Assembly: GCA_964019335.1 (NCBI GenBank)
Contig: OZ025684.1
Location: 248,001-312,000 of the forward strand
Length of the DNA stretch: 64,000 bases
Source of the DNA: Diplonema japonicum
Taxonomy: Eukaryota > Protista > Euglenozoa: Diplonemea
Reading direction: 5' to 3'
Both the position numbers and the translations under genes were made by a program. Below, one piece after another: positions 17,830 through 64,000 of this stretch. The notes under the pieces were generated by a model. That model worked only from the letters and a program-made list of their open reading frames with translations, was not told the origin of the DNA and did not search any database. Each line of letters opens with the position of its first letter. Positions within the stretch are counted from its first letter, which is position 1.

Positions 17830-19986
17830 TTATTGCGAGTCTTTCTTTTGCTGAAAGTTCGCAACCTCAAGTAAGGTCATAGGGGCCTGCCCTGGGAGGA
17901 TGGGCGACCGGGGTTGGGAAAGCTTTGAGTGCTTGCTTTCAATCCTACACAGCGCAGCTTTCCTAGTCGGCGTCACACTACGGTAGTTATCTTCTCCAGG
18001 GAACACTACAAAACCAGCGGTGACATGGCGCACAAAGGGGACAGGGAGCGAGAGAGAGGCAGCGGAGCGGGATAGACCATTCCCGTTCTCAAGGTTCACC
18101 AACAGAGAGCCCCGAGGGTTGTGCACTCTAGCGCCCCGTCGTGTAGGGCTGGTCGACGCCACCTGATGAAGGTCCTTCTCCGCAGCAACCACAACAGCAC
18201 ACCATCTCCTGGCTACATCGTCGTCAGGAAACACTCGGATATGTTCCTCGAGCTTTACCTTTGCTTGAGGATACTTACCTTCTCTCATAAACTTGAACCC
18301 TTCGTTAAAAAGGTCGTACTCCCTTGCACTGTGGCTGTGTCCGTCTATCACATACATCCATTCCTCGTTCTTCTCGCAACTTACAGGTCCTAATACCTGA
18401 TAAACAGGTTGTTCACCATGCAGCCCTCCGATGGCATCCACGAGCCGGAAGTTGAAGTCGTACTGCGTAGCCCGCATTGTGGCAAGATCGGCGACAATCC
18501 CGAGCGACATCGACATCGAGAGTTGCGACATTCTCTTGGCGGTAGCAGGTGGTACACCTGATATGAATGTTGATGTTAAAAGCTCGTTGCCTATGGAGCC
18601 GGATACAATGTCGCCCATTGCAACAGCGCAGGAAATGGGAACGTCCTCCTTCATTTTGAACGAGTTCACTGCTGAAATACACGCTGCGGTTGCTAACTGC
18701 GGTGCACTTGCGACAAAATTCCAAACACCCCATGTAGCCGTCATGTTTTCCGGTCCAAGCCTTTCTACAGTACCCTTGTGGAGGGTGATGGACGCCATGA
18801 CGATAGATGCGAATCCGTCAAACCTGGCCTGCATCGTGCTGAGCGGGAGGTTTAACGTGGTCTCTGCTTCGAGAACTACGACAACGCTCTTTGCTTTTTT
18901 GTACTCCTTTTTTAAAAGCTGGGAGGAGCCCCCTGCTTTGCATATGAACGATTTTGCCTTGTCGGAGAAGCTGTCGGTACCCGTGCGTTTAAGGTTCCCG
19001 CTGCTAGAAGCGTTTGATTTCTCCCCCGCAGACATTGACGATCCGGAAGCTTCTTCCTCCGCTGCGAACGTGTACGATTTCAAGGTGTTGAACGCGGTCA
19101 GCGAAACACGATTGTTTCGATTCAGCTTCCAATCGGTGTTTGTGGAATCGGCTGCTGTTTGGCAGTCTGTATCATTTGAAGCAAGCAGTGCCTGCGGGAG
19201 ATATGAACGCACTCCAGAGCACCACTTCAACACACCGTACAACGCACCTTGTGTTCTGTTGGATGCGATTTTAGACTCCAGTTTAACTCGAGCTTGGTCC
19301 AAGTCGAGGCTTATTACATTCAGCAGTACGTGTTCGATCAGGACTATGTCACTGTGCCCCAACGCCAGCTTCGCCAGGCAGAACAGCGACAGCAGTCTTG
19401 TAGCAAACGCCTCCATCGTGTTTTCAGTATGGGTACCGAACCCGTCAGGTTTTAATTCCTTCTCCCGGGGCAGTATAAACCCAAATTCATACATATCATC
19501 CACTGTTCTAACCGCAACGTAACAAACTACTATTGAAAAAGATAATCGTGCGTGCCACGATTCTGGATAGTCAAGCTGTGCCATCAGCGGGATGACAAGC
19601 GGCCATGTCTCGTAGTCTGTGTACCATGATGCCCTCCCCCAGTCTCGCACGCAAACGATGATTGAGAGACAGGAGAAGAAAGCGTCCTTTGGAATGGGTG
19701 TTTTGTGCAGTATAAGGTACCCCGCGCATTGGACAAGCATGATGCAGCATAATAGGAGTGTAGTGATGTCTGTGACCGAGCTGCTTCCTCTGTCGATGAC
19801 GCGGTACAGGCAGATGCCAAGCCACACGGCGCTGCAGCCAACCCCTGCCCCGGGTAGGGCTTGGTATATTTTTTGCGTTATGATGTCTTGCTTGCTTCCC
19901 CTCTCTTCTTCGACCATGAGAATCGTCGTCCGTCGGTTTGTGTGTCTCCGGGTAGAGGGGGCCGCCATAGGGTTGTCTAACTCCAT
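17830..19986 (-). CDS. Multi-TM receptor with degenerate class III cyclase domain, EWMY motif and TPR-like helix
   Basis: Likely start is MELDNP at 19986. About 5-6 hydrophobic segments, linker VRSYLPQALL, then a cyclase-like HKGTVERLGPENMTATW...AVAMGDIVSGSIG...FISG that lacks the catalytic Asp residues. NEEWMY and a TPR-like GFKFMREGKYPQAKVKLEEHIRVFPDD follow. Confidence 0.8.
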   Translation of the reverse strand: MELDNPMAAPSTRRHTNRRTTILMVEEERGSKQDIITQKIYQALPGAGVGCSAVWLGICLYRVIDRGSSSVTDITTLLLCCIMLVQCAGYLILHKTPIPKDAFFSCLSIIVCVRDWGRASWYTDYETWPLVIPLMAQLDYPESWHARLSFSIVVCYVAVRTVDDMYEFGFILPREKELKPDGFGTHTENTMEAFATRLLSLFCLAKLALGHSDIVLIEHVLLNVISLDLDQARVKLESKIASNRTQGALYGVLKWCSGVRSYLPQALLASNDTDCQTAADSTNTDWKLNRNNRVSLTAFNTLKSYTFAAEEEASGSSMSAGEKSNASSSGNLKRTGTDSFSDKAKSFICKAGGSSQLLKKEYKKAKSVVVVLEAETTLNLPLSTMQARFDGFASIVMASITLHKGTVERLGPENMTATWGVWNFVASAPQLATAACISAVNSFKMKEDVPISCAVAMGDIVSGSIGNELLTSTFISGVPPATAKRMSQLSMSMSLGIVADLATMRATQYDFNFRLVDAIGGLHGEQPVYQVLGPVSCEKNEEWMYVIDGHSHSAREYDLFNEGFKFMREGKYPQAKVKLEEHIRVFPDDDVARRWCAVVVAAEKDLHQVASTSPTRRGARVHNPRGSLLVNLENGNGLSRSAASLSLPVPFVRHVTAGFVVFPGEDNYRSVTPTRKAALCRIESKHSKLSQPRSPILPGQAPMTLLEVANFQQKKDSQ

Positions 19987-20212
19987 TGCACCCCCTTTTC
20001 CCTGTGGGTGTGGAAAGATAAATATAAAGGACGCCGTCAGAACGAGAGAAAAAAAAAAATTGAGTATCATAGCCTGCACGTTATACCGATACCAATCGGG
20101 TATTTCAATCGGTTCGGGTACTTAAATAGTGCAAAACTGGCCCGGGCACGCAGCCGCAGATGTCGAGATTGGGTCCAGAAATACGAAATATGACCATGAA
20201 CAAGGGTTACTA

Positions 20213-20420
20213 AACATATTGAAATGAAAATAAGTGCATTATTTAGTGGTGGCGGGTTTAACTCGAAATTATTACTGCACTCGCTTCGCTCGTAAGATCC
20301 TCGTTAAACCCTCTGCCACCACGCGTGAAATAATGCAATCTTATTTTCAGGTGCAGGTAGAAGATGAGAACAAGGGGGCGTCTCACAAAGACTTCCTTTA
20401 ACTCATATATTTTCATTTAA
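20213..20420. mobile_element. Palindromic MITE-like element interrupted by a 58-bp retro-insertion
   Basis: Inverted arms tgaaaataagtgcattattt..gtggtggc.gggtttaac / gttaaaccctctgccaccac..aaataatgcaatcttattttca. An uninterrupted relative lies at 43853-43970. Confidence 0.75.
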
Positions 20421-20594
20421 TAAAGAGTTATTATTATTATTATTATTATTATTTTTTTTTTTCTTTTGCTCGGCACAAAGTTGTCATTTAGTTTTAAAAA
20501 ATCACTCTTTCGAAAAGCCAATAAAATACTTGTTAACAACAAAAAAGAAAAGTTACTAGAAAAAGAAAAGGAACGATGACCCTGTAAAAGGACG

Positions 20595-22976
20595 TCAAAA
20601 AGTATGCAGCAGGTTATCATCTGGCTCTAAAAGTGTAATCGGGCCCATCTTCAACCAGTTGTATTCACGAAGGTGCATAAGGGGCACTTCTTTATAGAGG
20701 CAACATCGAAGGAGCTCGGAAGTGCGGCTGCTGCAGCAGTTGTTCGGAAAATCCTCTTCGAGCACACGAAGCGTTGTTGTGGCATCTCTGAAATGCCGTT
20801 CAACAAGCTGCTTCCACGCCTTAGTAATGAGCTCTTGGGGTTCCGCAGACCGGCACCATTCTTCATCGTCCAATGAAAGATCATTTGGTCCCGAGCTGCC
20901 TACGCTGGTGTACAACATGGAAGGGTACGGGAAGCATTTACCGACAACCCTCATCACGGGGAAGATGTAGCTGGATTTCACAAGTTTAATTGCGATATCC
21001 TCCGCCAACAGCACCTGCAGACCTTTCGCCCTTGCCAGTTCCACAAGCACGCTGCATGTGTTGAGCACCCTGCCGTGTACCAGTGGTGCCATCGTCGTCG
21101 AGGTACCGATGTTGCCACAGTGCGCAGGCCCCATGCATATCGCGAAAGTGACCAAAGGCAAGCAGAAAGCCTTGTTCGTGACGATGGAGCAGACCTCCTT
21201 GAGCCTCTCGGAGCTGATGAACTGCCACACGCACGTGATCCGCCCCCCGTCCACACGGTGCAAGGCTCCCTTGCATCGCTTCACTTGCATGGCAAACTCG
21301 TTTATAAGCAACGAGGTCCGCTGTTCGACATTCTTATAGTCAACACAGTCGAACTCCGCCACCATGACAGTAACACACGAAGACACCGAACCTTGCAAGG
21401 TCAACGACAATGATGACACAAAAGGCGAGCTGGGCATGTTGTCGCGCTCAATAGACGGCACTTCGGTGAGCGAGTCGGGCAGATACGGAAGATACTCCGT
21501 AAGGCAGTTCACCAGCACACGCATGCGAACAAAAAACATCACCCGATAGCTCCGCCGGTTGCACCGCCGTTCCTGTTCTTCAGCGGAGGAAATGAGGTCC
21601 AAGGCTGTGGTCAGTTGGAACTTCATGATGGCCTTGACGACCTTGCGTGCCACAAGGACAGTGTCGACGGCATGCTCGTGCTCCGCGATAAGCGAGTCAA
21701 GGTAGTCGTAAGAGATGCATTTGTGCTGCGACACATCGAGGCCTATGTACTCGTCGATGAGTGGGACACGCACAGAAACGATCTTATTCGTTATGAAGTA
21801 CCACATGAAGGTTGTCAAACCGCCCCATAAGAATGCCATGGCCAGCGCGAGCATCTGCATAAGAATCTGTTTGTATCCGCCGCCTAGCAGCAGGCCGTAG
21901 CTGTCGCGTGGTACGCCTAACGCGTGGACCACAAGGTCTTCTTCTGCCAGCAGACCCACACACAAGGTACCCCATGAACCGCAGCCCAGGTGAACAGCAA
22001 CGACATCGATGGCATCGTCAATACGAAGGTAGATGCGAAACTTTCGCATGGCTGCGTATGCGGCCGTGCTGCTCGCACCGATTAAGACAGCAGCCCATGG
22101 GGAGACGTAGGCGGCACCTGCCGTGATAGACACTAAGCCGGACTGTACACAGGAGCACATATGATGAATGTCGTAGTACCCCATTATTAACTTGCTTGCG
22201 ACGATGCCCACGCATGTTGAGGCAGCAGATGCGAGCAGAGTATTCGTCACGATGAACGGTGCGAGGCTCGTCCGCGTGCCGATGGTGAAGGCAAACCACG
22301 TCCACCACAAGATGAGGATGCCGGCGGAGAGCTGGAACTTGTTGTGCCCGCTGACAAGCTTTTGCCCCTCTTCAGTGAAAACATCAATATTACCTTGAAG
22401 CTGGCGAGGGCCCACAGCATGACCGAAGACAAGCGCACACGTTCCTCCAAAAACGTGTACAGTGATAGCGCGTGACGAGTCTAAAACCCCGCCATGCAGG
22501 GCGCTCGGGTTGGAAGAGGAGATAAGACCATGGTTGCTGTTGACGCAGTGCTCCAGAATCGGGAAGGAAATGCTGGTGACGAGCACGACGAAAATGAAAT
22601 AGGCGTTAACTCGGATTCTCTCCGCAACACAGCCCGATATGATGGTTACGCACGTGGTAACGTAAGGGAATGAGAGTAGCATGTTTCCCATTTCTATGGG
22701 ATCTTCAAGCCCGCTTCGGTACGCGTACAGCATGCTGTCCGTGCCTAGTATTAAAGTGCCTTTCCCGTAGGCCAGGCCGTAGCCCACGAGCCACCAGCAT
22801 AGGCAGCCAATCGAGATGTCGCCTATGTTTTTGAAGAGAATGCTGACCACATTTATCGACCTGACGCACCCTGCTTCCAGAAAGCAGAACCCCACCTGCG
22901 ATAGCAGCACCAGCACGAAACAGTACCGCAAGCCCAAGAAGTTTATGACTTCTGACGGCTGCACAGCTGGTGCCAT
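20595..22976 (-). CDS. AMT: Ammonium transporter (Amt/Mep) fused to a degenerate class III nucleotide-cyclase domain
   Basis: aa ~1-420 are Amt: GFCFLEAGCVRSINV..KN, IISGCVAER, D..AITVHVFGG..GPR, LWWTWFAF, GLVSITAG, IDDAIDVVAVHLGCGSWG, RVP..EYIGLD. The C-terminal part has the linker EYLPYLPDSL and a cyclase-like KGALHRVDGGRITCVW...ICMGPAHCGNIG...VHGRVLNTC, all in one uninterrupted ORF. Confidence 0.92.
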   Translation of the reverse strand: MAPAVQPSEVINFLGLRYCFVLVLLSQVGFCFLEAGCVRSINVVSILFKNIGDISIGCLCWWLVGYGLAYGKGTLILGTDSMLYAYRSGLEDPIEMGNMLLSFPYVTTCVTIISGCVAERIRVNAYFIFVVLVTSISFPILEHCVNSNHGLISSSNPSALHGGVLDSSRAITVHVFGGTCALVFGHAVGPRQLQGNIDVFTEEGQKLVSGHNKFQLSAGILILWWTWFAFTIGTRTSLAPFIVTNTLLASAASTCVGIVASKLIMGYYDIHHMCSCVQSGLVSITAGAAYVSPWAAVLIGASSTAAYAAMRKFRIYLRIDDAIDVVAVHLGCGSWGTLCVGLLAEEDLVVHALGVPRDSYGLLLGGGYKQILMQMLALAMAFLWGGLTTFMWYFITNKIVSVRVPLIDEYIGLDVSQHKCISYDYLDSLIAEHEHAVDTVLVARKVVKAIMKFQLTTALDLISSAEEQERRCNRRSYRVMFFVRMRVLVNCLTEYLPYLPDSLTEVPSIERDNMPSSPFVSSLSLTLQGSVSSCVTVMVAEFDCVDYKNVEQRTSLLINEFAMQVKRCKGALHRVDGGRITCVWQFISSERLKEVCSIVTNKAFCLPLVTFAICMGPAHCGNIGTSTTMAPLVHGRVLNTCSVLVELARAKGLQVLLAEDIAIKLVKSSYIFPVMRVVGKCFPYPSMLYTSVGSSGPNDLSLDDEEWCRSAEPQELITKAWKQLVERHFRDATTTLRVLEEDFPNNCCSSRTSELLRCCLYKEVPLMHLREYNWLKMGPITLLEPDDNLLHTF

Positions 22977-23352
22977 GTTCGCCTGTTTATCCTGCCCTCA
23001 ACATGTCAAAAAGAAAAACACCTATGTTGTGTTGCGTGGTTGCGGGGAACAAGGGGTTGGGGGGGGGGGAGAAAAAGGAAGAAAAGAAGTATACTTTGAT
23101 TTGGAAAGAAGTTTCGAAAAGAAGAACCAGCAAGTTTACCACTCAGCAAAGACGTATATGTGAGAAATAAAGGAGGCCAGTGTTGTTGGTGGCGCCCTGC
23201 ACAAGCACTGTCTACTTGATTGCAGGGGGCGCACCTCGGCCGAGTGTAACTTCTTCTCGTGCGCTCAATGAATGCGGTGTGGGCAAGCTTTATTATACCT
23301 TTCCAGAAAGTAAAAAAGGGAAAAAAAAGAAAAGAGAGAGGAAATTTGAGGG

Positions 23353-25329: not shown

Positions 25330-26727
25330 TCACCACTCAAATGTCTCGGTGTGGAGATCGAAGGAGACAGATGAAGAGGAGTGCTCCTTGCACGCCAGTC
25401 GAAGGGCTGTGAACATCTCAAAAGGTCCACAGAAGAGTACTGCCACCTTTGTCGCCACCTTCTTGGCCATCGACCCCTTCGTCTCTTCCACTTTCTCTTT
25501 GAACTCCCTCACCACCTCATTCACATCCATCCTGCCATTCTTCACCTTGTGCACAGGGTCTACTTCCATCTCACCTCTTGTGCGGTACATGGTGAGCCCA
25601 TGCTCAGCACTCATGGGGACAGCCGTGGCCACCCCATCACGGACAGACCAGTGAGTCTCAAGAAGCTGCACACTCCTCCCGCGCCTTCCCTGTTCAGCAA
25701 TGGCCGTTGCAATGGACCTCATGGGGGTGATCCCAATCCCGCCAGCCACAAACAGGAAGTGCTTGTACTTGTCAGAGTCGATGTCGATCGAGGTGTTCCC
25801 ATACGCCCCGTCCACGAGGACCTTGTGCTGCTGACCGGGCTTCGAATCCTTCGCAAGGGCCAACAGGCGTTCTCCCCAGTCCCCGCCACAGCGGATGCAG
25901 AACCTTGCAACAGTCCCCTCACACGGGGCGGTGGAGAAGGAGATGGGATGCCACTGGAAGCTCCCGATCTCAGGGATGGCAATGAAGGCATACTGTCCAG
26001 GAAGGTACTTCACCCCCTCCATCGACACCTCCACAATGTCCGTGCCTTCGATGTGTCGGATGGCCCCTTTCGCTGGCTGGAACATCGAAGTGTAGGTGCT
26101 TCTGATAGCTACATCGGCAACCCAAAGCCCGATCCCAACCATCACCAACTTAGCGGAGTGGAACATCAGGAACACGATGTAGGCGGTGAAGAAGACCCAG
26201 TGTGCAGAGTAGAAGAGGTCGAACACCTTGCGCCTGATGGGAGGCAGGGAGAACAGAAACAGAAACGCGGAACACACTCCACCACCAATGCCTGACCATT
26301 TTCGTGTGTAGTTCTCAGGTTTATCGGCAGTACCGGAGGTGAGCGCGATATAGCCGTGCAGAATGGCAAAGAAGTTGGAGAGCACAGCAGACTTCATGTG
26401 GTAGAAGATCCTGCGCTCGAAGGGTATCCCGAAGAGGAAGGTGAGAGGGGAGTTCCTTGCGGCGGTCGCAAAGGCCAACATGAGGGATATCTGAGCTAAC
26501 TTGCCAGAGTACTTGGTGTCGCCCTTGTATACACTGACCCCGAACATCGATATAAGGAATCCCAAGTAGCCCACTTCACCTGCAGTGACAGATCTGAAAA
26601 CTACACGCTGCAAGGGGTGTGCCAGAACCCATCTTGCCCTCAGACCGAACCTCCACGCTGATGCTACATCTTCATTTGGCGTCCACCTGTCGTTGAGCGG
26701 TAGCTTCTTCTGCGCAACTGACGACAT
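25330..26727 (-). CDS. Ferric reductase / NOX-superfamily flavocytochrome (copy 1)
   Basis: Heme His pairs (FYH..LHG; SAH..MFH), PGQY, QWHPISFS (FAD), VDGAYG, VAGGIGITP and FCGP (NADPH), C-terminal HTETFEW. Confidence 0.93.
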   Translation of the reverse strand: MSSVAQKKLPLNDRWTPNEDVASAWRFGLRARWVLAHPLQRVVFRSVTAGEVGYLGFLISMFGVSVYKGDTKYSGKLAQISLMLAFATAARNSPLTFLFGIPFERRIFYHMKSAVLSNFFAILHGYIALTSGTADKPENYTRKWSGIGGGVCSAFLFLFSLPPIRRKVFDLFYSAHWVFFTAYIVFLMFHSAKLVMVGIGLWVADVAIRSTYTSMFQPAKGAIRHIEGTDIVEVSMEGVKYLPGQYAFIAIPEIGSFQWHPISFSTAPCEGTVARFCIRCGGDWGERLLALAKDSKPGQQHKVLVDGAYGNTSIDIDSDKYKHFLFVAGGIGITPMRSIATAIAEQGRRGRSVQLLETHWSVRDGVATAVPMSAEHGLTMYRTRGEMEVDPVHKVKNGRMDVNEVVREFKEKVEETKGSMAKKVATKVAVLFCGPFEMFTALRLACKEHSSSSVSFDLHTETFEW

Positions 26728-27339
26728 ATTTGCAAGATAAGAAATCTGTTTGTGAGCTGCGACACCGAGTAATATAAATGAAAAGAAGAGTGGAAAACTG
26801 GCGAAAAGAAACGTACTATAGAAATAAAAGATGGTGTAAAGGTAAACGACTAGAACTAATACTCAGAAATTGCAAGATCAGCCTAAGCTTCATGTGAGAA
26901 GGACGCCGGGTCTGGCACCACTTCTTTCGGTGTGTCTTCGCAAGGAATCCACTTTTTCTATCATGAGCGTCATTGTTGTGAACTGGTTACCTGTAGAGCA
27001 ATGACATGGCGGCTTTCGAAAACAATCAAAATACGCTGCGAGAAATAGGAGCTGAAAGTATTCAACATTCACAAAAAAGAGGGCAAGGTAAGGAAGGAAG
27101 CAAGAAATCAGGGGTTAGAGGAATAACGTGTGGTGACATAGTCTGGCGAGTGATCGCCAAGTAAGAGATTATCGTACGGATCAATTAGCCTAATCTTGAA
27201 AGCTTGACTTTGGCTAGACACGATAAAGCTAGAAGGCGGCTGTTAGAAGAATTACGCAACACATCAGGACAAGTCGACATGAGACCTTTGTGATAAAGAG
27301 AGGTTGGAGGCGTGCCATGCGGAGTTTGTTTAAACACAA

Positions 27340-28740
27340 TCACCACTCAAATGTCTCGGTGTGGAGGTCGAAGGAGACAGATGAAGAGGAGTGCTCCTTG
27401 CACGCCAGTCGAAGGGGTGTGAACATCTCAAAAGGTCCACAGAAGAGTACTGCCACCTTTGTCGCCACCTTCTTGGCCATCGACCCTTTCGTCTCTTCCA
27501 CTTTCTCTTTGAACTCCCTCACCACCTCATTCACATCCATCCTGCCATTCTTCACCTTGTGCACAGGGTCTACTTCCATCTCACCTCTTGTGCGGTACAA
27601 GGTGAGCCCATGCTCAGCACTCATGGGGACAGCCGTGGCCACCCCATCACGGACAGACCAGTGAGTCTCAAGAAGCTGCACACTCCTCCCGCGCCTTCCC
27701 TGTTCAGCAATGGCCGTTGCAATGGACCTCATGGGGGTGATCCCAATCCCGCCAGCCACAAACAGGAAGTGCTTGTACTTGTCAGAGTCGATGTCGATCG
27801 AGGTGTTCCCATACGCCCCGTCCACGAGGACCTTGTGCTGCTGACCGGGCTTCGAATCCTTCGCAAGGGCCAACAGGCGTTCTCCCCAGTCCCCGCCACA
27901 GCGGATGCAGAACCTTGCAACAGTCCCCTCACACGGGGCGGTGGAGAAGGAGATGGGATGCCACTGGAAGCTCCCGATCTCAGGGATGGCAATGAAGGCA
28001 TACTGTCCAGGAAGGTACTTCACCCCCTCCATCGACACCTCCACAATGTCCGTGCCTTCGATGTGTCGGATGGCCCCTTTCGCTGGCTGGAACATCGTAG
28101 CATAGCGGCCACGAATAACCACATCGGCAACCCATAGGAAGACACCTAGAATGACGCCACCCGCTTTATGTAGCAAAAGGAACACGATGTAGGCGGTGAA
28201 GAAGACCCAGTGTGCAGAGTAGAAGAGGTCGAACACCTTGCGCCTGATGGGAGGCAGGGAGAATAGAAACAGAAGCGCGGAACACACTCCACCACCAATG
28301 CCGGTCCATTTGAACGTGAACATTTCGGGCTCATCAGCGACACCGGAGGTGAGCGCGATGTAGCCATGCAAGAAGACGAAGAGGAATGACATCACAGCAG
28401 ATTTCATGTGGTAGAAGATCCTGCGCTCGAAGGGTATCCCGAAGAGGAAGGTGAGAGGGGAGTTCCTTGCGGCGGTCGCAAAGGTTAACATGAGGGGGAT
28501 CTGAGCAAGCTCGCCACTCTCGTGTGTGTCCCAAAGGGTGACGGATGCCCAGAAGACCACTAAGAAGAACAATACAAGCAAGATCTCACCCAAGGTGAAG
28601 GACCAGAAGATAACACGCTGCAAGGGATGCGCCAGCACCCATCTTACCTGCACGCTGGGCCTCCATGCAAAGGGGGCTTCTTCATACGGCACCCACCGCG
28701 GGCCCGCACACAGCTTGTCCTCCACAGATATGGGCACCAT
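27340..28740 (-). CDS. Ferric reductase (copy 2)
   Basis: Same motifs. The C-terminal half is almost identical to copy 1. Confidence 0.93.
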   Translation of the reverse strand: MVPISVEDKLCAGPRWVPYEEAPFAWRPSVQVRWVLAHPLQRVIFWSFTLGEILLVLFFLVVFWASVTLWDTHESGELAQIPLMLTFATAARNSPLTFLFGIPFERRIFYHMKSAVMSFLFVFLHGYIALTSGVADEPEMFTFKWTGIGGGVCSALLFLFSLPPIRRKVFDLFYSAHWVFFTAYIVFLLLHKAGGVILGVFLWVADVVIRGRYATMFQPAKGAIRHIEGTDIVEVSMEGVKYLPGQYAFIAIPEIGSFQWHPISFSTAPCEGTVARFCIRCGGDWGERLLALAKDSKPGQQHKVLVDGAYGNTSIDIDSDKYKHFLFVAGGIGITPMRSIATAIAEQGRRGRSVQLLETHWSVRDGVATAVPMSAEHGLTLYRTRGEMEVDPVHKVKNGRMDVNEVVREFKEKVEETKGSMAKKVATKVAVLFCGPFEMFTPLRLACKEHSSSSVSFDLHTETFEW

Positions 28741-29321
28741 ATTAGTTTAAAAATACTTTTTATGCGATTGCTATGAGTTTTGACTGTTTTTAAGGTGACC
28801 AACAAATGAGGTAAATAAGAATAGAAATGTAAGAATCGAGCATTAAGTCCTTTTATAGGTAGAAGCAACCTTGTACGAACGCTTTAACGCTACGGGAAAG
28901 TGGAGGAAACAACACGGCTTGAGACACAAAAGGTACTTAGGAAGTGTTCACCTAGCTTTCAAGGGTGAAAAAAAAAAATGTATCTTCCGAAAGGGAGAAA
29001 TGAAAAGAATTAGAAACTAACTTTTTTTTTTCAGATCGAAAAAAAAGAAAAACAAAACAAAAAAGATAGAAAGGAAACAAGGAACATAAGGCAGTTACAA
29101 TAAACACCGGTGTTCCTTTTGTTTATGCTTCCTTCTGTTTTCTTTTTTTCAATCTGATAAACTACAAGAACAAGACCTTCCGTTCAGAACATAACTTAAC
29201 AAGTGTATCTAAGTCAACCTACTTTTGTTAAGAAAATTGAGAATGCTATTTGAATAATAAAATTTAAATTCGATAAAGTTTCAGTGTGCATGGGTGCTCA
29301 CTGTTCATTTAAATCTACAGT

Positions 29322-30707
29322 TCAGAACTCAAATGTCTCGGTGTGGAGATCGAAGGAGACAGATGAAGAGGAGTGCTCCTTGCACGCCAGTCGAAGGGGT
29401 GTGAACATCGCACCAGGGCCACAGAACAGTACTGCCACCTTCACTTTCCCTTCCGTTTTCTCGACCTTCTCTTTGAACTCCCTCACCACCTTCTTCGTAT
29501 CCATCCTGCCATTCACTATTTTATTGTTTGAGTCATTTATGGTCACATTCTCCACATCAGTGCGGTACAAGGTGAGCCCATGCTCAGCAGTCATGGGGAC
29601 AGCCGTGGCCACCCCATCACGGACAGACCAGTGAGTCTCAAGAAGCTGCACACTCCTCCCGCGCCTTCCCTGTTCAGCAATGGCCGTTGCAATGGACCTC
29701 ATGGGGGTGATCCCAATCCCGCCAGCCACAAACAGGAAGTGCTTGTACTTGTCAGAGTCGATGTCGATCGAGGTGTTCCCATACGCCCCGTCCACGAGGA
29801 CCTTGTGCTGCTGACCGGGCTTCGAATCCTTCGCAAGGGCCAACAAGCGCTCTCCCCAGTCCCCGCCGCTGCGGATGCAGAACCTTGCAACAGTCCCCTC
29901 ACACGGGGCAGAGGAGAAGGAGATGGGGTGCCACTGGAAGCCCCCGATCTCAGGGATGGCAATGAAGGCATACTGTCCAGGAAGGTACTTCACCCCCTCC
30001 ATCGACACCTCCACAATGTCCGTGCCTTCGATGTGTCGGATGGCCCCTTTCGCTGGCTGGAACATCGCCATGTACAGGTTGCGGAAGATCACATCGGCCC
30101 CCCAAAGCCCGATACCGATCAGAACTGTTGTTGCAGAGTGGAACATCAGGAACACGATGTAGGCGGTGAAGAAGAACCAGTGGGTGTAGTAGAAGGCCTC
30201 GAACATCTTACGCCTGATGGTGTAGTGGGATGTCATGCCGAGCATCGCAGCGCAGCCTGCAGCTGCGAGGCCTGTCCAGAGCTTTGTGAAGTTGTCAGAG
30301 TCAGTGGCGTCACGGCTGATGAAGGCGATGGCGCAGTGCAGGTAGGCACAGAGGTTTGCGAATATTGCGATCATCTTATGGTAGGCAACCCTGCGCTCGA
30401 AGGGTATCCCGAAGAGGAAGGTGAGAGGGGAGTTCCTTGCGGCGGTCGCAAAGGTTCCGATGAGTGGGATTTGAGCCAAACTCCCGCTGTTGCTTGTGTC
30501 TCGCCCGTATGCGCTGATGCCCAGAGCCGCAAGCCCCACCACACTCAGCAGTACCTCACCTACAGTGAAGGTCTGGAACACGACACGCTGCAAGGGGTGT
30601 GCCAGCACCCATCTTGCCCTCAAACCCCACCTCAACACCGATGGTGTGTCTTCGTAAGGAGTCCACCCTTCCAGTTCAGTATAGGATTTCCTTCTAGGAG
30701 GACCCAT
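29322..30707 (-). CDS. Ferric reductase (copy 3)
   Basis: Same motifs. The TM region is shared with copies 4 and 5. Confidence 0.93.
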   Translation of the reverse strand: MGPPRRKSYTELEGWTPYEDTPSVLRWGLRARWVLAHPLQRVVFQTFTVGEVLLSVVGLAALGISAYGRDTSNSGSLAQIPLIGTFATAARNSPLTFLFGIPFERRVAYHKMIAIFANLCAYLHCAIAFISRDATDSDNFTKLWTGLAAAGCAAMLGMTSHYTIRRKMFEAFYYTHWFFFTAYIVFLMFHSATTVLIGIGLWGADVIFRNLYMAMFQPAKGAIRHIEGTDIVEVSMEGVKYLPGQYAFIAIPEIGGFQWHPISFSSAPCEGTVARFCIRSGGDWGERLLALAKDSKPGQQHKVLVDGAYGNTSIDIDSDKYKHFLFVAGGIGITPMRSIATAIAEQGRRGRSVQLLETHWSVRDGVATAVPMTAEHGLTLYRTDVENVTINDSNNKIVNGRMDTKKVVREFKEKVEKTEGKVKVAVLFCGPGAMFTPLRLACKEHSSSSVSFDLHTETFEF

Positions 30708-37366: not shown

Positions 37367-39406
37367 TTAAAAACTGTTCAAAGCGGTGTACATCCCACCG
37401 TAAGTGTGCTTCTCACAAGCAGGGACAAGAGGGGAATACTCGAATATTATGCACCCAGCGTCCCATTCGTCGACGGGGGTAAAGGACGCCGTCGGCTGGT
37501 TGTCGGAAAATATACACAAACAAAGAACCTTAAGCTCAGTAGCGGAGAAGCAGAGAAGATGACAAAGCCTCGACGAAGTACCTGGAATGGTGATAAAACG
37601 ACGTTTTGAATCACCAACATGCCCGTACAATGCAGGGCCTACATACAAACCAGAGTAAGCTGCATCAGCCGAACCGGAGATCAAGGCTAAATACTCTGTA
37701 GCGGCGGCTTCGTGTTGCGAACAATTCTTTGTGGTGTTCCACGCGAGCATCAAAACATCTCCCTGAAGGGACACAACGGCACCGCCGGTCTTCTCACAGG
37801 CATCTACCACCGTCCCCAACGTCTTCCCCAGAGGTATTTCAGAATGACACATATTCGTCTTCATAACGCTTGCCTTGGCAACTTGAATGAACCCGTTGTC
37901 CTGCATTAAAGTGGACGAAATGTTGTCGTGCTTAACATCTTGTTGCTCGTTCGAGCTTGCAGCCTCGACGGCATGTCGGCGTCCTATCAAAGTCTCCGGT
38001 AGAAGAATCACAGGATAGACGATTCCTATCCCCTTAAGGTTTTTCGGCCCAACGTGAAGTACTACTAACCCGTTTACGTTGTCAAGTACGTCCATCACCT
38101 CTGTCGATACGGCCACTGCACCGCCGACACTGATGCTTTCTAAGCGAGCTGCTTTGTTCACAGTGTTGCCGAAGTAGTCGTACCTTCTTGTGAGGGGGTT
38201 TCGTTGCGCGCTGACTTCGCCGTAATGTACCCCAACACGTACCCGAAGCCCGCCCCATGGACCGTCGTCGTTTCTGCAGCAGAGGCTGTTCTCCATGATA
38301 GCGTGCGGCCATTCCGCATTAACAAGCCCTTCCTGCACAGCGAACCCGAACATCACAGCGTCGTGCGCAGATGAGAAGGCCACCATGAAGGCATCCCCAA
38401 TGGTCTTCACCTCGTACCCAAAGTGCGATGCGATACAACGCCGTACAACATTGTCGTGAGCAGCAAGCGCATCACGCATTGCAATGGGACTCTCTTCCCA
38501 CAACGCACTCGACGATTGGATATCAGTGAACACCATTGCAATCGGTTGGCCGTCCAGACCGGGTGCCTCAATAGTATCAGGGACAGCGGAGAAAAGCGCC
38601 TCGGGCAGGAACGGTCGATATATATGCAGATTGGTTAAAATAGTAGTGAAGGCAGCGTGCATGTCATGCGGAAGGGTGTCGTTTGCAAGGCATGACTCGG
38701 CGGCGATGAGATCGAAACGAGAGAGGTGATGGGCGACGGTGTTCGCAGTCTTGACACAGGCTTCCGTCTTACGCTGCTCCTGCATGACAAGCTCCGTGAA
38801 ACTGTGCGTCAGCATGTAGTCGAAGAAGATTAGGCTAACACGGCCCAAGGCTTTAACAGCATGGAAACTAAAGCTCCTTTCACACGGCGGTCTATCGCAC
38901 ATCCATGCCGCAGATCGTTTGGCGTAATCGGGGGTGCCTGGCATGTCATACATCCCGAATCTGATCAACCCCTCTACACCTGAGACAATGATCCACAAGA
39001 TGAACACGGCCACATACAGCCGAGGTCTTGTATGCGTGTACACCAGCACATCTGTAATCAGCACAAAAAAAGCCCAATTCCCGTCGGCTATCTCAGAAGT
39101 TGCCCAAAGGTCAAGGATCGCCACGCACACCACAGCTCCTATTAAAATACTGTGAAAAAGGACATCTGACAAACTTCGCATTGCCAGCATCCATATCAGT
39201 AGGCACCAGGCTGCAACCCATGAAACGCGTATTACCATTGTGAACAAATTGATTTCATCAGGTTGCTGTCCTGGGAGATTAATAAAGCCAACGACGAGAA
39301 CGAAAAGCATCCCCACAAGTATCATTTTCTTCCTCCTTTTTATCGCGAGGGAGTCGTTCTGTTGTAGTACCCTGTTGTATATCGCTCTCAACAGCTTGAG
39401 CATCAT
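37367..39406 (-). CDS. Multi-TM adenylate cyclase: intact class III domain followed by a degenerate second domain
   Basis: About 6 TM segments, linker HIYRPFLPEALF. Catalytic motifs VFTDIQSS, YEVKTIGDAFMV, VRVGVHYG and DYFGNTVNKAARLE retain both Asp residues, the adenine-specifying Lys/Asp, and Asn/Arg. The second domain GGAVVSLQGDVLMLAWN...GPALYGHVG is degenerate. Confidence 0.92.
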   Translation of the reverse strand: MMLKLLRAIYNRVLQQNDSLAIKRRKKMILVGMLFVLVVGFINLPGQQPDEINLFTMVIRVSWVAAWCLLIWMLAMRSLSDVLFHSILIGAVVCVAILDLWATSEIADGNWAFFVLITDVLVYTHTRPRLYVAVFILWIIVSGVEGLIRFGMYDMPGTPDYAKRSAAWMCDRPPCERSFSFHAVKALGRVSLIFFDYMLTHSFTELVMQEQRKTEACVKTANTVAHHLSRFDLIAAESCLANDTLPHDMHAAFTTILTNLHIYRPFLPEALFSAVPDTIEAPGLDGQPIAMVFTDIQSSSALWEESPIAMRDALAAHDNVVRRCIASHFGYEVKTIGDAFMVAFSSAHDAVMFGFAVQEGLVNAEWPHAIMENSLCCRNDDGPWGGLRVRVGVHYGEVSAQRNPLTRRYDYFGNTVNKAARLESISVGGAVAVSTEVMDVLDNVNGLVVLHVGPKNLKGIGIVYPVILLPETLIGRRHAVEAASSNEQQDVKHDNISSTLMQDNGFIQVAKASVMKTNMCHSEIPLGKTLGTVVDACEKTGGAVVSLQGDVLMLAWNTTKNCSQHEAAATEYLALISGSADAAYSGLYVGPALYGHVGDSKRRFITIPGTSSRLCHLLCFSATELKVLCLCIFSDNQPTASFTPVDEWDAGCIIFEYSPLVPACEKHTYGGMYTALNSF

Positions 39407-61141: not shown

Positions 61142-63685
61142 CTAGTTCACGAGGGGGTGGTCCTTGCCAAGGGGCTCTATGAGTGCTGGGCTGCCTTTTG
61201 CCTTCTGCAGCCTATCGCGGTAGAGCTTCACGACAGAGGAGTCATCAGCGTAGCCCTCGAGCTCCTTGATGGCGCCCTCCACGTCGCCTGCCATCATGAG
61301 GGAGTAGCTGTTGTTGTACTTGGTGTTGGGGTCCCCTCTGGCCCCCTCCGCGAGCTGGTACATCCACTCCATGTTCTCGTGCTCCTTCTGCTTCATCACC
61401 TCGTAGACCATGAGGGTCCTCTCACAGTGCTTCGGGAACCAGACGTGCTGCAGGGACCTCACGTAGGCGACGTTCGTGACCTCCTCGTGCATCACCTTGT
61501 CGATCGCGATGTCCGCACCCCCCATCCGCCCCACCCGCTCCACAATGTGCACCCACGACGCCAGCGACCCGATGAACGAGTACTTCTTCATCCCCTCGCA
61601 CCCCATGTGCCCGCACTTCACTTCCCCCGAGACTATCCCGATCGAGAACCTCTTCCCGAGCGTCGTGTCCCCTGCGATCCCCCGCCCGCAGGTGTACGCC
61701 GCTATCCGATGTGACGAGCAAGGCCTCGCACCGTTGAACGACGCGTACAATCGGTCACCGCTGAAGCTGTCGGGGATCCCCTTTGTTGTCTTCACCATGA
61801 GCAAGGACATCGCGAGGTAGGTGTGTATGTTTGACAGGATGTCCGAAGTCTTCTTGTTCCCTGTATCCTGCAGAAAGGACACCACATTGCAGGCAAGCAG
61901 CGTCACCTTCTTCTGCTTTACATCTGAGCCGAGCAAGGCGTGCTTCCCTGCTATGATCATTGATGTCGACACGCCTGACGAGATGGAAGAATGCCTGAAG
62001 GACACACTCAGGTGGCTCGTGTTCCCATGCGGAGAGCCTGCCTCCGTGTTGTACTCATCCCCGTCGTCTGAGTCGCTTGTCTGAAGGACAGAGGCGGGCA
62101 TGTAGTTCCTGTACTCCACAAGGTTTTGGATCATCTGGAGGAAGCTGACTTGCATGAGGCGAACCTCTTGAAGGGAGCTCAGAGGGCGTTGCATGTTGAC
62201 CCCCTCCAACCGCATCACTGCCACCATCGCCATCTCCTTCTCCAGCACGAGAAGAGGGTCGATGATCTTCAGCATGAAGACAACAGCCACCACAATGAGG
62301 GCCATGCCCGCAACAGTGATGACCACGTACAGGATGGCGCGCGACACGGCAAGGTCGTCGTCCACCTTGTCCTCAGCGGCCCGGATCTCCTTCTGCGTCT
62401 CTGCCACCTTCGTGTCGATGCTGCCCAGGATGTACGCCCTGTCGATCACAATGTGCACGTACCAGTCGATCCCGTGCTTGTCAGCCATCTTCCCCACTCT
62501 GTAAAAGAACTCCTCCCCCTCCGGTGCGAGGTCAGTCGTGATGTTTAAAGTGGTGAGGTTCTTCGTTGTTGACAGCGTCTCGATGTCAAGGTTTGACTTC
62601 GCTTGGTGCCCGACACTGCGGATGATAGGGTCGGGGCTGTCCTCAAGCTTCAGCGCATGCAGGGCACCGGTGGTGTCGCGGTCGATGACAGCTCCATGCG
62701 AGGCACCTACGAGGCTTCCGATGGACGTGGGATCCAGCCAGGTGGACCGGACGGTGACGAAGACCCGACTATTGGAGGAGATGTTCAATTTGGAGAGGAA
62801 ACTGCTGACATGACGTAGGTCGGCACCTGATGAGACGAACCCAGTGCGGAGGCCGTTGTGGTAAACGGGAGTAAGGCAGGTGACGACCACAATGTCATTG
62901 TTGATGCTCACGGGCGAGGTCCACATGCTGGACCCAAGAGGAACAAAAGCAGCAGCATCGAAGAGCGAATTGTCAAGCGGCTCAGCAAGGTACTTGTCAG
63001 CACAGGGCTCGTTGGGGACAGCTCCGTTCGTGGACAACGCCGACCGCCTGCACGTAGCGATATCACGGTTGACATCTACTGACGGGTCCGTCACGAGTGC
63101 GGGCAACCCTGTTCCATAAGAGGCACTGGCAGTAAAGGTCATGTTGCGCCCGCCATGAGGATGGTCGTCCCCGTAGTTGTACAAGCCTTCTATTGAGTGG
63201 TATGATGTTGGCGGGCGTTCTATTGTCTGTGTGTCCTCATACACAATGACAACGAGCCTGTTCTTCAGGAAGACACCGATGCCGGTGCACCCTTCGTCCT
63301 TCAGGTAGTTCATGGACCAGAATATTCTTGCGATCGACGACTGATGCCATCCCCAGGTTTTTACGTCGTCCCAGTTGTTGAAGGTCAGCTCGTCAGCGAG
63401 CATCATACCAGCTGTTCTCTGAGGTAGCAGGAAGTGGAACATGTGATCGATGGTCTCACTTTGTAGGACTTCCATGTACTCTGTTGTCCTGTTGCGCACG
63501 CTGTCAGAGCCCACTGTGAAGGCCGTGTTCACAGACGCATCGCGGGACTGCTTGATATCGTCCAGAGCAGCATCGCTGCTTGTCACTGCAAGGAACGAGC
63601 TCACAAAAGCCGTCACAACAACACACAGCAGCACGAGAGATATGCTCAGCACCTTGATGCTCATCATGAGGCTTGTGCTCGTCAT
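61142..63685 (-). CDS. Two-TM receptor: large extracellular (Cache-like) domain, HAMP-like linker, degenerate cyclase domain, EWMY motif
   Basis: Likely start is MTSTS at 63685. TM1 is near the N-terminus, followed by a ~420-aa ectodomain (WTSPV..., IDWYVHIVID) and TM2. Then HAMP-like PLLVLEKEMAMVAVM..SSLQEVRLMQVSFLQMIQNL, linker EYRNYMPASVL, cyclase-like KGIPDSFSGDRLYASFNG...GEVKCGHMG..YSFIG, and NMEWMYQL. Confidence 0.88.
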   Translation of the reverse strand: MTSTSLMMSIKVLSISLVLLCVVVTAFVSSFLAVTSSDAALDDIKQSRDASVNTAFTVGSDSVRNRTTEYMEVLQSETIDHMFHFLLPQRTAGMMLADELTFNNWDDVKTWGWHQSSIARIFWSMNYLKDEGCTGIGVFLKNRLVVIVYEDTQTIERPPTSYHSIEGLYNYGDDHPHGGRNMTFTASASYGTGLPALVTDPSVDVNRDIATCRRSALSTNGAVPNEPCADKYLAEPLDNSLFDAAAFVPLGSSMWTSPVSINNDIVVVTCLTPVYHNGLRTGFVSSGADLRHVSSFLSKLNISSNSRVFVTVRSTWLDPTSIGSLVGASHGAVIDRDTTGALHALKLEDSPDPIIRSVGHQAKSNLDIETLSTTKNLTTLNITTDLAPEGEEFFYRVGKMADKHGIDWYVHIVIDRAYILGSIDTKVAETQKEIRAAEDKVDDDLAVSRAILYVVITVAGMALIVVAVVFMLKIIDPLLVLEKEMAMVAVMRLEGVNMQRPLSSLQEVRLMQVSFLQMIQNLVEYRNYMPASVLQTSDSDDGDEYNTEAGSPHGNTSHLSVSFRHSSISSGVSTSMIIAGKHALLGSDVKQKKVTLLACNVVSFLQDTGNKKTSDILSNIHTYLAMSLLMVKTTKGIPDSFSGDRLYASFNGARPCSSHRIAAYTCGRGIAGDTTLGKRFSIGIVSGEVKCGHMGCEGMKKYSFIGSLASWVHIVERVGRMGGADIAIDKVMHEEVTNVAYVRSLQHVWFPKHCERTLMVYEVMKQKEHENMEWMYQLAEGARGDPNTKYNNSYSLMMAGDVEGAIKELEGYADDSSVVKLYRDRLQKAKGSPALIEPLGKDHPLVN

Positions 63686-64000
63686 TGACGGAAAAAAAAA
63701 AAAAGAACCTTTCTCCCCCATTATTTAATTTTCAAATGTTGCGTACGTTGCAAAGAAAGAAGAAAAAAAAAAAAGAAAATAGACAAACAGAGAAATGTTT
63801 CACTAGAGTCCAATCGCCTTTGTTGTGAAGACTTAAAAAGAGCACGCGATTTCTTTTGAACAAAGAAGAGAGGAAGAACAGAAGGGAGGGGGGCCGGGGG
63901 TTTAGTAATATCGTCCCTTTCAACCCTCACAAGGTCAGTGGGGGCGGGGGAGATACAAAACGGACAGAAGAAAAAAAAAAGGGAGGAGGGGGAAAGGGAG

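What the first reader, a model, noticed from the sequence alone, without database searches (positions are those of the whole stretch)
20595..22976. Eukaryotic Amt-(pseudo)cyclase fusion: candidate ammonium transceptor coupled to cyclic-nucleotide signalling
Seen: one uninterrupted 793-aa ORF joins a full Amt domain to a helical linker (EYLPYLPDSL), a class III cyclase-fold domain and an EEW + TPR-like tail. The cyclase lacks both metal-binding Asp residues (MVAEF for FxDI; RVDGG for KxxGD) and the catalytic Arg (NTCSVL for NxAxRL), so it is probably inactive alone. Established: prokaryotic Amt fusions to signalling domains exist (Amt-histidine kinase Ks-Amt5; Amt-diguanylate cyclase Sd-Amt1) and act as ammonium sensors. 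I do not know of a characterised eukaryotic Amt-class III cyclase fusion. Inference: this is an ammonium/nitrogen sensor that signals allosterically through a partner cyclase or adaptor.
Basis: partly seen in the sequence, partly recalled or inferred. Interest (0 to 1): 0.88.

Follow-up and report, generated by a model that had tools for sequence, protein, structure and literature searches.

The report
Ammonium transporter fused to dead cyclase
A protist gene joins an ammonium-transporter domain that keeps all six ammonium-contacting residues of a known bacterial sensor pocket to a catalytically dead copy of a cyclic-nucleotide cyclase; it belongs to a large, undescribed euglenozoan receptor family and may sense ammonium, though no function has been tested.

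Summary
Window 20595-22976 (-) is one open 793-codon frame. It encodes:
- an Amt domain (Pfam E 6e-77);
- a three-helix linker ending in YLPYLPDSL;
- a class III cyclase-fold domain (AF2 pLDDT 81; Z 15.4 to CyaB and to the sAC C2 domain; hhalign 97% to canonical cyclases);
- an EEW motif and a TPR-like tail.

The cyclase domain lacks both metal-binding Asp residues, the substrate Lys/Asp pair and the catalytic Arg, so it is dead.

New here:
- The dead domain matches the second, degenerate cyclase domain (psiC2) of a family whose usual layout is sensor, linker, active C1, psiC2. This gene has no C1.
- The profile finds 2427 representative proteins; the 18 with a source name are diplonemid or euglenid transcripts, or unassigned genome or metagenome records. 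Sensors in a 54-protein sample include Amt, Cache, ankyrin and kinase domains.
- Versions with intact catalytic residues exist in Diplonema and in this genome (a 1615-codon frame on contig C7).
- The Amt domain keeps the twin-His pore and all six N1/N2 ligand residues of the bacterial ammonium receptors, but has lost the outer-site Trp (W148 to N).

Function is inferred, not tested. No RNA data were available. One of four DNA runs carries a frameshift before the EEW motif. Other first-stage notes of this scan flag a double-Amt relative on another contig and this gene's altered S1 site.

The parts
20595..22976 (-). Complete 793-aa ORF (stop codon at 20595-20597): Amt, linker, psiCHD, EEW, TPR-like tail.
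   Evidence: GC3 is uniform across the two halves (0.656 and 0.669), and the coding strand has no pyrimidine tract longer than 11 nt.
21702..22937 (-). Amt domain, residues 14-425. N1/N2 ligand residues Q27, E34, N50, D53, T111, S114. Twin His H174 and H329. D166. Outer S1 site altered: W148 to N146, FAG to SSR, NxGS to TIGT.
   Evidence: Pfam. Alignments to Sd-Amt1 8qj3 and AmtB 1xqe. Paralog alignment. Signature regex.
21465..21704 (-). Cytoplasmic three-helix linker, residues 425-504, running straight on from the conserved Amt C-terminal ExxGLDxxxH...YDY motif.
   Evidence: AF2 helices H2-27, H31-47 and H53-74, block pLDDT 84-97. Conserved in the paralogs.
21468..21497 (-). EYLPYLPDSL motif, residues 494-503: the pre-cyclase helix motif of the family.
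   Evidence: In C1-bearing relatives this motif lies directly upstream of C1.
21399..21464 (-). Low-confidence Ser/Pro-rich spacer, residues 505-526.
   Evidence: pLDDT below 50 for model residues 86-102. Length varies across the family.
20886..21407 (-). Pseudo-cyclase homology domain (psiC2 type), residues 524-697.
   Evidence: Foldseek and VIA-align against PDB cyclases. hhalign. ESM Atlas features. In C1-bearing proteins the matching domain lies downstream of C1.
20856..20864 (-). EEW motif, residues 705-707; W707 is invariant across the family.
   Evidence: The family consensus here is EWMYE.
20697..20840 (-). TPR-like three-helix tail, residues 713-760.
   Evidence: AF2 helices H289-301, H305-318 and H325-336, block pLDDT 88-98. 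This part of the profile matches TPR proteins many times over.
20598..20696 (-). C-terminal 33 residues (761-793); model confidence drops and the last 19 residues are below pLDDT 50.
37367..39406 (-). Context: 679-aa family member with about four TM helices, linker, catalytically intact C1 and psiC2.
   Evidence: Its AF2 model has pLDDT 86.4. C1 is 34% identical to T. brucei adenylate cyclase 1FX2.
17830..20079 (-). Context: adjacent 749-aa gene with a hydrophobic N-terminal part, YLPQALL linker remnant, psiCHD, EEW and TPR-like tail.
61142..63721 (-). Context: 859-aa receptor-type member with signal/TM segment, ectodomain, TM helix, linker and psiCHD.

Best explanation
Anatomy (shown). The gene encodes an integral-membrane Amt domain whose cytoplasmic C-terminus runs into a three-helix linker, a catalytically dead class III cyclase-homology domain and a short TPR-like cap. 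It is a C1-less member of a euglenozoan family of modular receptor cyclases. The usual layout in that family is variable sensor, linker (YRPYLP), active C1, degenerate psiC2, with or without an EEW/TPR tail.

Mechanism (inferred). The Amt domain acts mainly as an ammonium receptor. NH4+ would occupy the conserved N1/N2 pocket beside the twin-His pore and shift the Amt C-terminus and the linker, as described for Sd-Amt1. That movement would change how the psiC2/TPR module engages partners. Because the module cannot make cAMP, any output would need a catalytic family member. Two routes are possible: mixed Amt trimers with the C1-bearing Amt paralog on contig C7, or pairing of psiC2 with a C1 domain from one of the 150 or more cyclase-domain copies in the genome. 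The protein would then be a regulatory, pseudo-enzyme subunit that couples ammonium to cAMP output. Whether it also transports ammonium is open. The pore residues are intact, but the outer recruitment site is remodelled.
For: - Domain anatomy and fold.
- psiC2 identity: in all 13 fetched proteins with a real C1, the profile splits into a linker match upstream of C1 and a pseudo-domain match downstream. The same holds in 17 of 19 sampled paralogs in this genome. VIA-align matches the domain to residues 283-468 of human sAC, which I take to be its C2 domain.
- Active relatives: Diplonema P0002 and P0003 carry Amt plus PF00211, E 5e-29 and 1e-26. The 1615-codon frame on contig C7 has Amt, Amt, then FTDI, KTIGD and TVNRAAR. 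Artemidia transcript P0128 has Amt, psiCHD and TPR followed by an intact PF00211 domain.
- Sensor signature: Q-x6-E-x15-N-x2-D-x-x56-T-x2-S is present. All six ligand residues named in PMC11152129 are kept. They are invariant in the four-sequence alignment with Diplonema.
- C1-less Amt fusions recur: L016, L018 and L015 in this genome and P0123 elsewhere.
- The gene looks maintained: GC3 is 0.66 against 0.57 in two neighbouring genes, and there is no internal pyrimidine tract over 11 nt.
Against: - No functional or expression data exist for any family member, and no RNA run was found.
- The N1/N2 signature also occurs in proven transporters such as plant AMT1 (PMC11152129), so it does not prove a receptor role.
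- The F/T position of the signature is Ile here and Cys in the paralogs.
- AF2 did not place C1 and psiC2 of the window's 679-aa cyclase in an sAC- or AC9-like pseudo-heterodimer: TM 0.31 or less and rmsd 19-21 A on two-domain targets, pTM 0.58. Pairing of psiC2 with C1 is therefore unsupported.
- This paralog sits on a terminal branch about twice the median length (1.43 against 0.7). It has lost W148 and remodelled the S1 site.
- One of four runs carries a frameshift that removes the EEW/TPR tail.
Confidence: 0.45

Rival explanations
1. It is an ammonium transporter with a regulatory cytoplasmic tail. The Amt conducts NH4+/NH3, and the psiCHD/TPR module only gates or localises the transporter, for example by binding a nucleotide or a kinase. 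Information would flow from cytosol to pore, with no signalling output.
For: - The twin His, D166 and the conserved C-terminal ExxGLD...H motif are intact.
- N1/N2-bearing Amts include real transporters (PMC11152129).
- W148 substitutions do not abolish AmtB flux: the title of Fong et al. 2007, cited in PMC11152129, says W148L increases it.
- Plant AMT1 is regulated allosterically through its C-terminus (abstract of 10.1101/2020.11.03.367383, listed).
Against: - The same linker and psiCHD module sits behind many unrelated sensor domains (Cache, substrate-binding, ankyrin, kinase) and next to active cyclase domains. That fits an output or transducer module better than a transporter-specific gate.
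- The genome also has plain Amts of about 480-530 aa that could serve for uptake.
Confidence: 0.3
2. It is a decaying paralog. After loss of C1 the gene drifts under relaxed constraint and has little or no function; the open frame persists only because the loss of constraint is recent.
For: - The terminal branch is 1.43, against 0.70 for L018 and a median of 0.7.
- The changes W148N, FAG to SSR and NxGS to TIGT, with a loop deletion, are specific to this paralog.
- A GATC duplication in run X3 truncates the protein at residue 705.
Against: - The frame of 793 codons is open; by chance this would happen with probability about (61/64)^793, roughly 1e-17.
- The sequence is identical in the other three runs.
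- All N1/N2 and pore residues are kept.
- The psiCHD and TPR fold confidently.
- GC3 is higher than in two neighbouring genes.
- C1-less Amt fusions are conserved across organisms: P0123 matches the profile at E 4e-38.
Confidence: 0.12
3. The domain is still an active cyclase that uses non-canonical residues or works as a homodimer.
For: The catalytic Asn position is retained, and an acidic residue (E541) lies close to the Asp1 position.
Against: Both metal Asp residues, the substrate Lys/Asp pair and the transition-state Arg are all replaced. These columns are not conserved across the 32-member family either.
Confidence: 0.03

Closest known systems
Sd-Amt1 (Shewanella denitrificans; PDB 8qj3, 8qj4, 8qpf) and Ks-Amt5 (Kuenenia): bacterial ammonium receptors
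   Same: - An Amt module is fused at its C-terminus, through a helical linker, to a cytoplasmic transducer.
- Sd-Amt1 is the best PDB sequence match to this Amt domain (E 1.6e-32).
- The six N1/N2 ligand residues are conserved.
- Both face the mismatch between an Amt trimer and a transducer that works as a dimer.
   Different: - The bacterial transducers are a GGDEF diguanylate cyclase and a histidine kinase, and both are active. Here the transducer is a dead class III cyclase-homology domain plus a TPR-like tail.
- The linker is not recognisably a HAMP domain: Pfam finds none at E <= 1.
- This protein is eukaryotic.
- The F/T signature position is Ile.
- The outer-site Trp (W148) is lost.
Amt-class III cyclase fusions of Diplonema papillatum (P0002, P0003; NCBI name 'putative ammonium transporter 1 member 5') and the 1615-codon frame on contig C7 of this genome
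   Same: - They share the Amt clade, at 39-41% identity over 65% of the query.
- They share the YRPYLPDSL linker.
- They share psiC2.
   Different: - They carry an intact catalytic C1 between the linker and psiC2; the window protein has none.
- None of them is characterised.
Trypanosomatid receptor adenylate cyclases (T. brucei GRESAG4/ESAG4; catalytic domains 1FX2 and 1FX4)
   Same: - The C1 of the window's 679-aa family member is 33-34% identical to these catalytic domains, and they are the top structural match.
- Both families are receptor-type, are greatly expanded, and lie in tandem arrays.
   Different: - From my own knowledge, the trypanosome enzymes have a periplasmic-binding-protein-like ectodomain, one TM helix and a single catalytic domain that homodimerises.
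- No psiC2/EEW/TPR module or Amt sensor is described for them.
Two-domain cyclases with a degenerate partner domain (mammalian tmAC C1/C2; soluble AC ADCY10 C1-C2)
   Same: - Two cyclase-homology domains lie in one chain.
- The window's psiCHD superposes on residues 283-468 of sAC, which I take to be its C2 domain (Z 15.2).
   Different: - From my own knowledge, C2 in tmAC and sAC supplies Lys, Asp, Asn and Arg to a shared active site. Here psiC2 lacks the Lys, Asp and Arg as well.
- The predicted arrangement of C1 and psiC2 did not match the tmAC or sAC arrangement.
Eukaryotic channel- or transporter-cyclase fusions (Paramecium and Plasmodium K+-channel-AC; apicomplexan and ciliate P-type-ATPase-GC; fungal rhodopsin-GC)
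   Same: A membrane transport or sensor module is fused to class III cyclase domains in protists. This comparison rests on my own knowledge, apart from the RhGC structures that appear among the fold matches.
   Different: - The membrane module is different.
- Those cyclase domains are active.

Membership tests
Amt/Mep/Rh family (PF00909) | Pfam score over the whole domain above the gathering cut-off | tested here: met
   259.4 bits against a cut-off of 23.2; residues 19-420 match profile positions 6-396 of 399.
Amt/Mep/Rh family (PF00909) | Twin-His pore (AmtB H168 and H318) and D160 | tested here: met
   H174, H329 and D166 align to them and are invariant with the Diplonema sequences.
Amt/Mep/Rh family (PF00909) | Outer S1 recruitment site (AmtB W148, S219) | tested here: not met
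   W148 is N146. S219 is either deleted (HMMER alignment) or Thr (MAFFT alignment). The paralogs L016 and L018 and the Diplonema proteins keep Trp.
Ammonium receptors with an N1/N2 site (cluster 2 of PMC11152129) | Signature Q-x6-E-x15-N-x2-D-[F/T]-x54-60-T-x2-[S/T] | tested here: inconclusive
   Every position is met (Q27, E34, N50, D53, T111, S114, spacing 56) except the F/T position, which is I54. In Sd-Amt1 that Phe is not a ligand. The cluster also includes real transporters.
Ammonium receptors with an N1/N2 site (cluster 2 of PMC11152129) | NH4+ binding without net translocation, and ligand-dependent transducer output | not testable with these tools
   This needs electrophysiology and biochemistry.
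Class III nucleotidyl cyclases (PF00211) | Cyclase-homology fold | tested here: met
   Z 15.4, rmsd 2.9 A over 168 residues. 155 Foldseek matches at E <= 1e-3. hhalign probability 97%. Pfam itself gives no hit.
Class III nucleotidyl cyclases (PF00211) | Two metal-binding Asp residues | tested here: not met
   They are Met and Gly in the hhalign register. Asp1 has no conserved counterpart in the family, and only some members keep a GD at Asp2.
Class III nucleotidyl cyclases (PF00211) | Substrate Lys/Asp (or Glu/Cys) pair and the transition-state Asn/Arg pair | tested here: not met
   Lys is Arg, Asp is Leu, Arg is Val; only the Asn is kept.
Euglenozoan linker-(C1)-psiC2-EEW/TPR receptor module (defined here, unnamed) | YRPYLP linker helix, psiCHD with the G..GN.GT motif, and an EWMYE motif followed by a TPR-like hairpin | tested here: met
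   See alignments A2 and A5. The profile gives 2427 hits at E <= 1e-3. The window protein itself scores E 2.6e-153 against the profile it helped to build; the independent paralogs score 1e-17 to 1e-29.
Euglenozoan linker-(C1)-psiC2-EEW/TPR receptor module (defined here, unnamed) | Catalytic C1 between linker and psiC2 | tested here: not met
   The window ORF has no C1 hit. Its profile match is continuous over residues 425-793, which leaves no room for a C1.

The most novel reading that the evidence does not exclude
Euglenozoa have a large, undescribed class of eukaryotic ammonium receptors. In these, an N1/N2-type Amt trimer drives class III adenylate-cyclase signalling. C1-less members such as this gene would be dedicated pseudo-enzyme subunits that join or pair with catalytic members, tune cAMP output, and so resolve the mismatch between an Amt trimer and a cyclase dimer.
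Probability: 0.25. Interest if true: 0.85.

Novelty: new variant of a known kind. Interest (0 to 1): 0.62.

Why it matters
Amt proteins that act as receptors, fused to a signalling module, have been characterised so far only in two bacteria: one with a histidine kinase and one with a diguanylate cyclase. This family would put the same logic into eukaryotes and connect it to cAMP, the main environmental-sensing messenger of kinetoplastids, whose receptor cyclases still have no known ligands.

An Amt sensor offers a receptor cyclase with an obvious candidate ligand. That makes ligand control of euglenozoan cyclases directly testable.

The C1-less and C1-bearing paralogs in one genome form a natural experiment on what the conserved pseudo-cyclase/TPR module does.

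Tried and rejected
- Word-indexed homolog search with the C-terminal part alone found nothing. This reflects the limit of the word index, not absence, because the full HMM search found 2427 relatives.
- Pfam gives no hit on the C-terminal parts of the window protein or of paralogs L016, L018, L015 and L004-L009. The fold emerged only from the profile and structure work.
- I first read the C-terminal domain as a decayed catalytic domain, because MAFFT aligned it to Diplonema C1. I rejected that reading: BLAST and profile matches place it on the second domain.
- I tested whether C1 and psiC2 form an intramolecular pseudo-heterodimer, using an AF2 model of the window's 679-aa cyclase. Both domains are confident, but the arrangement does not match sAC or AC9 (rmsd 19-21 A, TM 0.31 or less, pTM 0.58). 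The result is inconclusive and gives no support for the pairing idea.
- Transcript continuity could not be tested. No listed run is on record as RNA, and all four runs laid were Logan contigs. Indirect evidence only: no internal polypyrimidine tract, and uniform GC3.
The organism of the window was not identified.
- The last homolog search, with alignment A5, was limited by its length window and word index and returned only four proteins. Three are annotated with PF00211.
- Six literature searches and two papers searched by term found no description of an Amt-class III cyclase fusion.
Full report
**1. The observation**

Window 20595-22976 on the minus strand is a single 793-codon open frame. 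Contigs of about 2780 nt from four public runs in three studies cover it with no base differences. The one exception is a 4-nt insertion in run X3.

Pfam places an Ammonium_transp domain on residues 19-420 (E 6.4e-77) and finds nothing in the remaining 370 residues. The best solved relatives of the Amt part are the Shewanella ammonium receptor Sd-Amt1 (8qj3, E 1.6e-32) and E. coli AmtB.

**2. The C-terminal half is a cyclase fold**

Three paralogs in the same genome (L016, 875 aa; L018, 822 aa; L015, 1286 aa) share the whole C-terminal half. A 32-sequence alignment of that part gave an AF2 model of residues 425-793 with mean pLDDT 80.9.

- Foldseek returned 155 PDB matches at E <= 1e-3; every match shown is a class III cyclase.
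- VIA-align gave Z 15.4 (rmsd 2.9 A, 168 residues) to CyaB. It gave Z 15.2 to residues 283-468 of human soluble AC, which I take to be its C2 domain. Both matches cover model residues 100-273.
- hhalign of the family alignment against six canonical cyclase domains from this genome gave probability 97%, E 1.2e-10 over 180 columns. The aligned stretch includes the linker helix.
- The family profile also matches proteins annotated with PF00211, one of them bacterial, at E 2e-10 to 3e-6. ESM Atlas features point to cyclase clusters.

In the hhalign register:

| Canonical residue | Residue here |
|---|---|
| Metal Asp 1 | Met |
| Metal Asp 2 | Gly |
| Adenine-specifying Lys | Arg |
| Second specificity Asp | Leu |
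| Transition-state Arg | Val |
| Catalytic Asn | Asn (kept) |

W707 of the EEW motif is invariant across the family. The tail part of the profile hits genuine TPR proteins in 10-25 repeats each, so "TPR-like" is also justified.

**3. What the dead domain is**

The top full-length homologs are two Diplonema papillatum proteins that combine PF00909 with a recognisable PF00211.

In these two and in 11 other fetched proteins with a real cyclase domain (C1), the profile of the window's C-terminal half splits in two. The linker matches directly upstream of C1, and the pseudo-domain matches about 100 residues downstream of C1. The same holds for 17 of 19 sampled cyclase genes in this genome and for the 679-aa cyclase inside the window at 37367-39406.

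The family's standard layout is therefore variable N-terminal sensor, YRPYLP linker, active C1, degenerate psiC2, with or without an EEW/TPR tail. The window protein has the linker joined straight to psiC2. Its catalytic C1 is absent rather than mutated.

The YLPYLPDSL motif aligns with the LLxxLLPxxI helix that precedes canonical cyclase domains.

**4. The family**

- The profile finds 2427 representative proteins at E <= 1e-3, of which 452 are at E <= 1e-10.
- Of 20 representatives looked up, 18 have a record of their source: 10 are transcripts of the diplonemids Artemidia, Sulcionema, Flectonema and Namystynia or the euglenids Peranema and Chasmostoma, and the rest are ENA, JGI or Logan records without a stated organism. 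Diplonema is named.
- N-terminal partners seen in a sample of 54 include Amt, ankyrin, protein kinase, dCache and substrate-binding domains.
- This genome (62.5 Mb, 132 contigs) has at least 151 PF00211 matches and at least a dozen Amt loci.
- One of those loci is a 1615-codon frame on contig C7 with Amt, Amt, linker, C1 and psiC2. Its C1 keeps FTDI, KTIGD and TVNRAAR.
- An Artemidia transcript (P0128) shows a third order: Amt, psiCHD/TPR, then an intact cyclase domain.
- C1-less Amt fusions recur in this genome (L016, L018, L015) and in another assembly (P0123).

**5. The Amt domain**

Alignment to AmtB shows that the twin His (H174, H329) and D166 are kept.

Alignment to Sd-Amt1 shows that all six ligand residues of the N1/N2 ammonium-sensing pocket are kept: Q27, E34, N50, D53, T111 and S114. 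These are the residues described in PMC11152129. The published signature is matched except for its F/T position, which is Ile here and Cys in the paralogs. In double-Amt relatives only the second Amt keeps the signature.

Some changes are specific to this paralog:

- AmtB W148 is N146.
- The FAG after D160 is SSR.
- NxGS is TIGT, with a loop deletion.

An Amt-domain tree puts this protein in the fused euglenozoan clade on a terminal branch of 1.43, against a median of 0.7. Its exact position is unresolved.

**6. How it probably works**

From established Amt topology, the C-terminal module is cytoplasmic. I infer the following:

- NH4+ occupancy of the N1/N2 pocket moves the Amt C-terminus and the linker, as proposed for Sd-Amt1.
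- The psiC2/TPR module converts that movement into a change in protein-protein contacts.
- Since the module is dead, any cAMP output needs a catalytic partner. The candidates are the C1-bearing Amt paralog, through mixed trimers, or a C1 domain that pairs with psiC2.

I tested the pairing idea indirectly by folding the linker-C1-psiC2 part of the window's 679-aa cyclase (pLDDT 86.4, pTM 0.58). Its C1 is 34% identical to T. brucei adenylate cyclase 1FX2. Two-domain cyclases (AC9, sAC) superpose only with rmsd 19-21 A. An sAC-like C1/psiC2 arrangement is therefore not supported, and the pairing step remains speculative.

**7. Rivals**

- A transporter with a regulatory tail fits the intact pore. 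It also fits the fact that N1/N2-bearing Amts include plant AMT1 transporters.
- A decaying paralog fits the long branch, the remodelled S1 site and the GATC duplication in run X3. That duplication shifts the frame at residue 700 and stops at 705. Against decay: the open frame, the conserved ligand set, the confident fold, GC3 of 0.66 against 0.57 in two neighbouring genes, and conservation of the C1-less subfamily.

**8. What could not be done**

- No listed run is on record as RNA, and all the data laid were contigs. A single transcript is therefore supported only indirectly: there is no internal pyrimidine tract above 11 nt, against 26-35-nt tracts upstream; GC3 is uniform; and related Amt-linker-psiCHD fusions occur as single diplonemid transcripts, for example P0128.

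**9. Novelty**

The searches found no paper describing an Amt-class III cyclase fusion. The architecture does exist, unremarked, in public Diplonema annotations.

I class this as a new variant of a known kind: sensor Amts fused to transducers, and protist transporter-cyclase fusions. Other first-stage notes of this scan flag a "double-Amt pseudo-cyclase" on another contig of this genome and the altered S1 site of this gene.

Noticed in passing
window 20878-20882 (run X3 only): Run X3 carries a tandem GATC duplication. It shifts the frame at residue 700 and stops at 705, which removes the EEW/TPR tail. The other three runs match the window exactly.
   Followed up: partly
window ~20100-20476 and ~23116-23340: Very high-copy dispersed repeats flank the gene. 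Contig depth there is 100-1000 times that of the gene, and contigs join 20059 to 23163 through the repeat.
   Followed up: no
window 37367-39406 (-): A 679-aa receptor-type cyclase with about four TM helices, a YRPFLP linker, an intact C1 (34% identical to T. brucei AC 1FX2) and psiC2. It is a typical member of a family with at least 151 cyclase-domain copies in this genome.
   Followed up: yes
window 17830-20079 (-) and 61142-63721 (-): Two more C1-less members of the module family. One has a hydrophobic N-terminal part. The other has a signal/TM segment, an ectodomain of about 425 aa and one TM helix. Together they show a constant output module combined with variable sensors.
   Followed up: partly
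P0128 (Artemidia motanka transcript): A third domain order: Amt, linker, psiCHD/TPR, then an intact PF00211 domain at residues 975-1162.
   Followed up: partly
L015, L017, P0001, P0123, P0197, P0229 (double-Amt proteins): The first of the two Amt domains lacks the N1/N2 signature. These first domains form a separate clade, four of the six on very long branches. The second Amt keeps the signature.
   Followed up: partly
window 25330-37089 (-): Six tandem ORFs of 455-466 aa. The first, 25330-26727, is a ferric-reductase-type gene (Ferric_reduct, FAD_binding_8, NAD_binding); the other five were not scanned.
   Followed up: no
L020 (G000:C14, ~556223): An Amt fused to C-terminal ankyrin repeats. 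It is a different Amt fusion in the same genome, on a very long branch.
   Followed up: no
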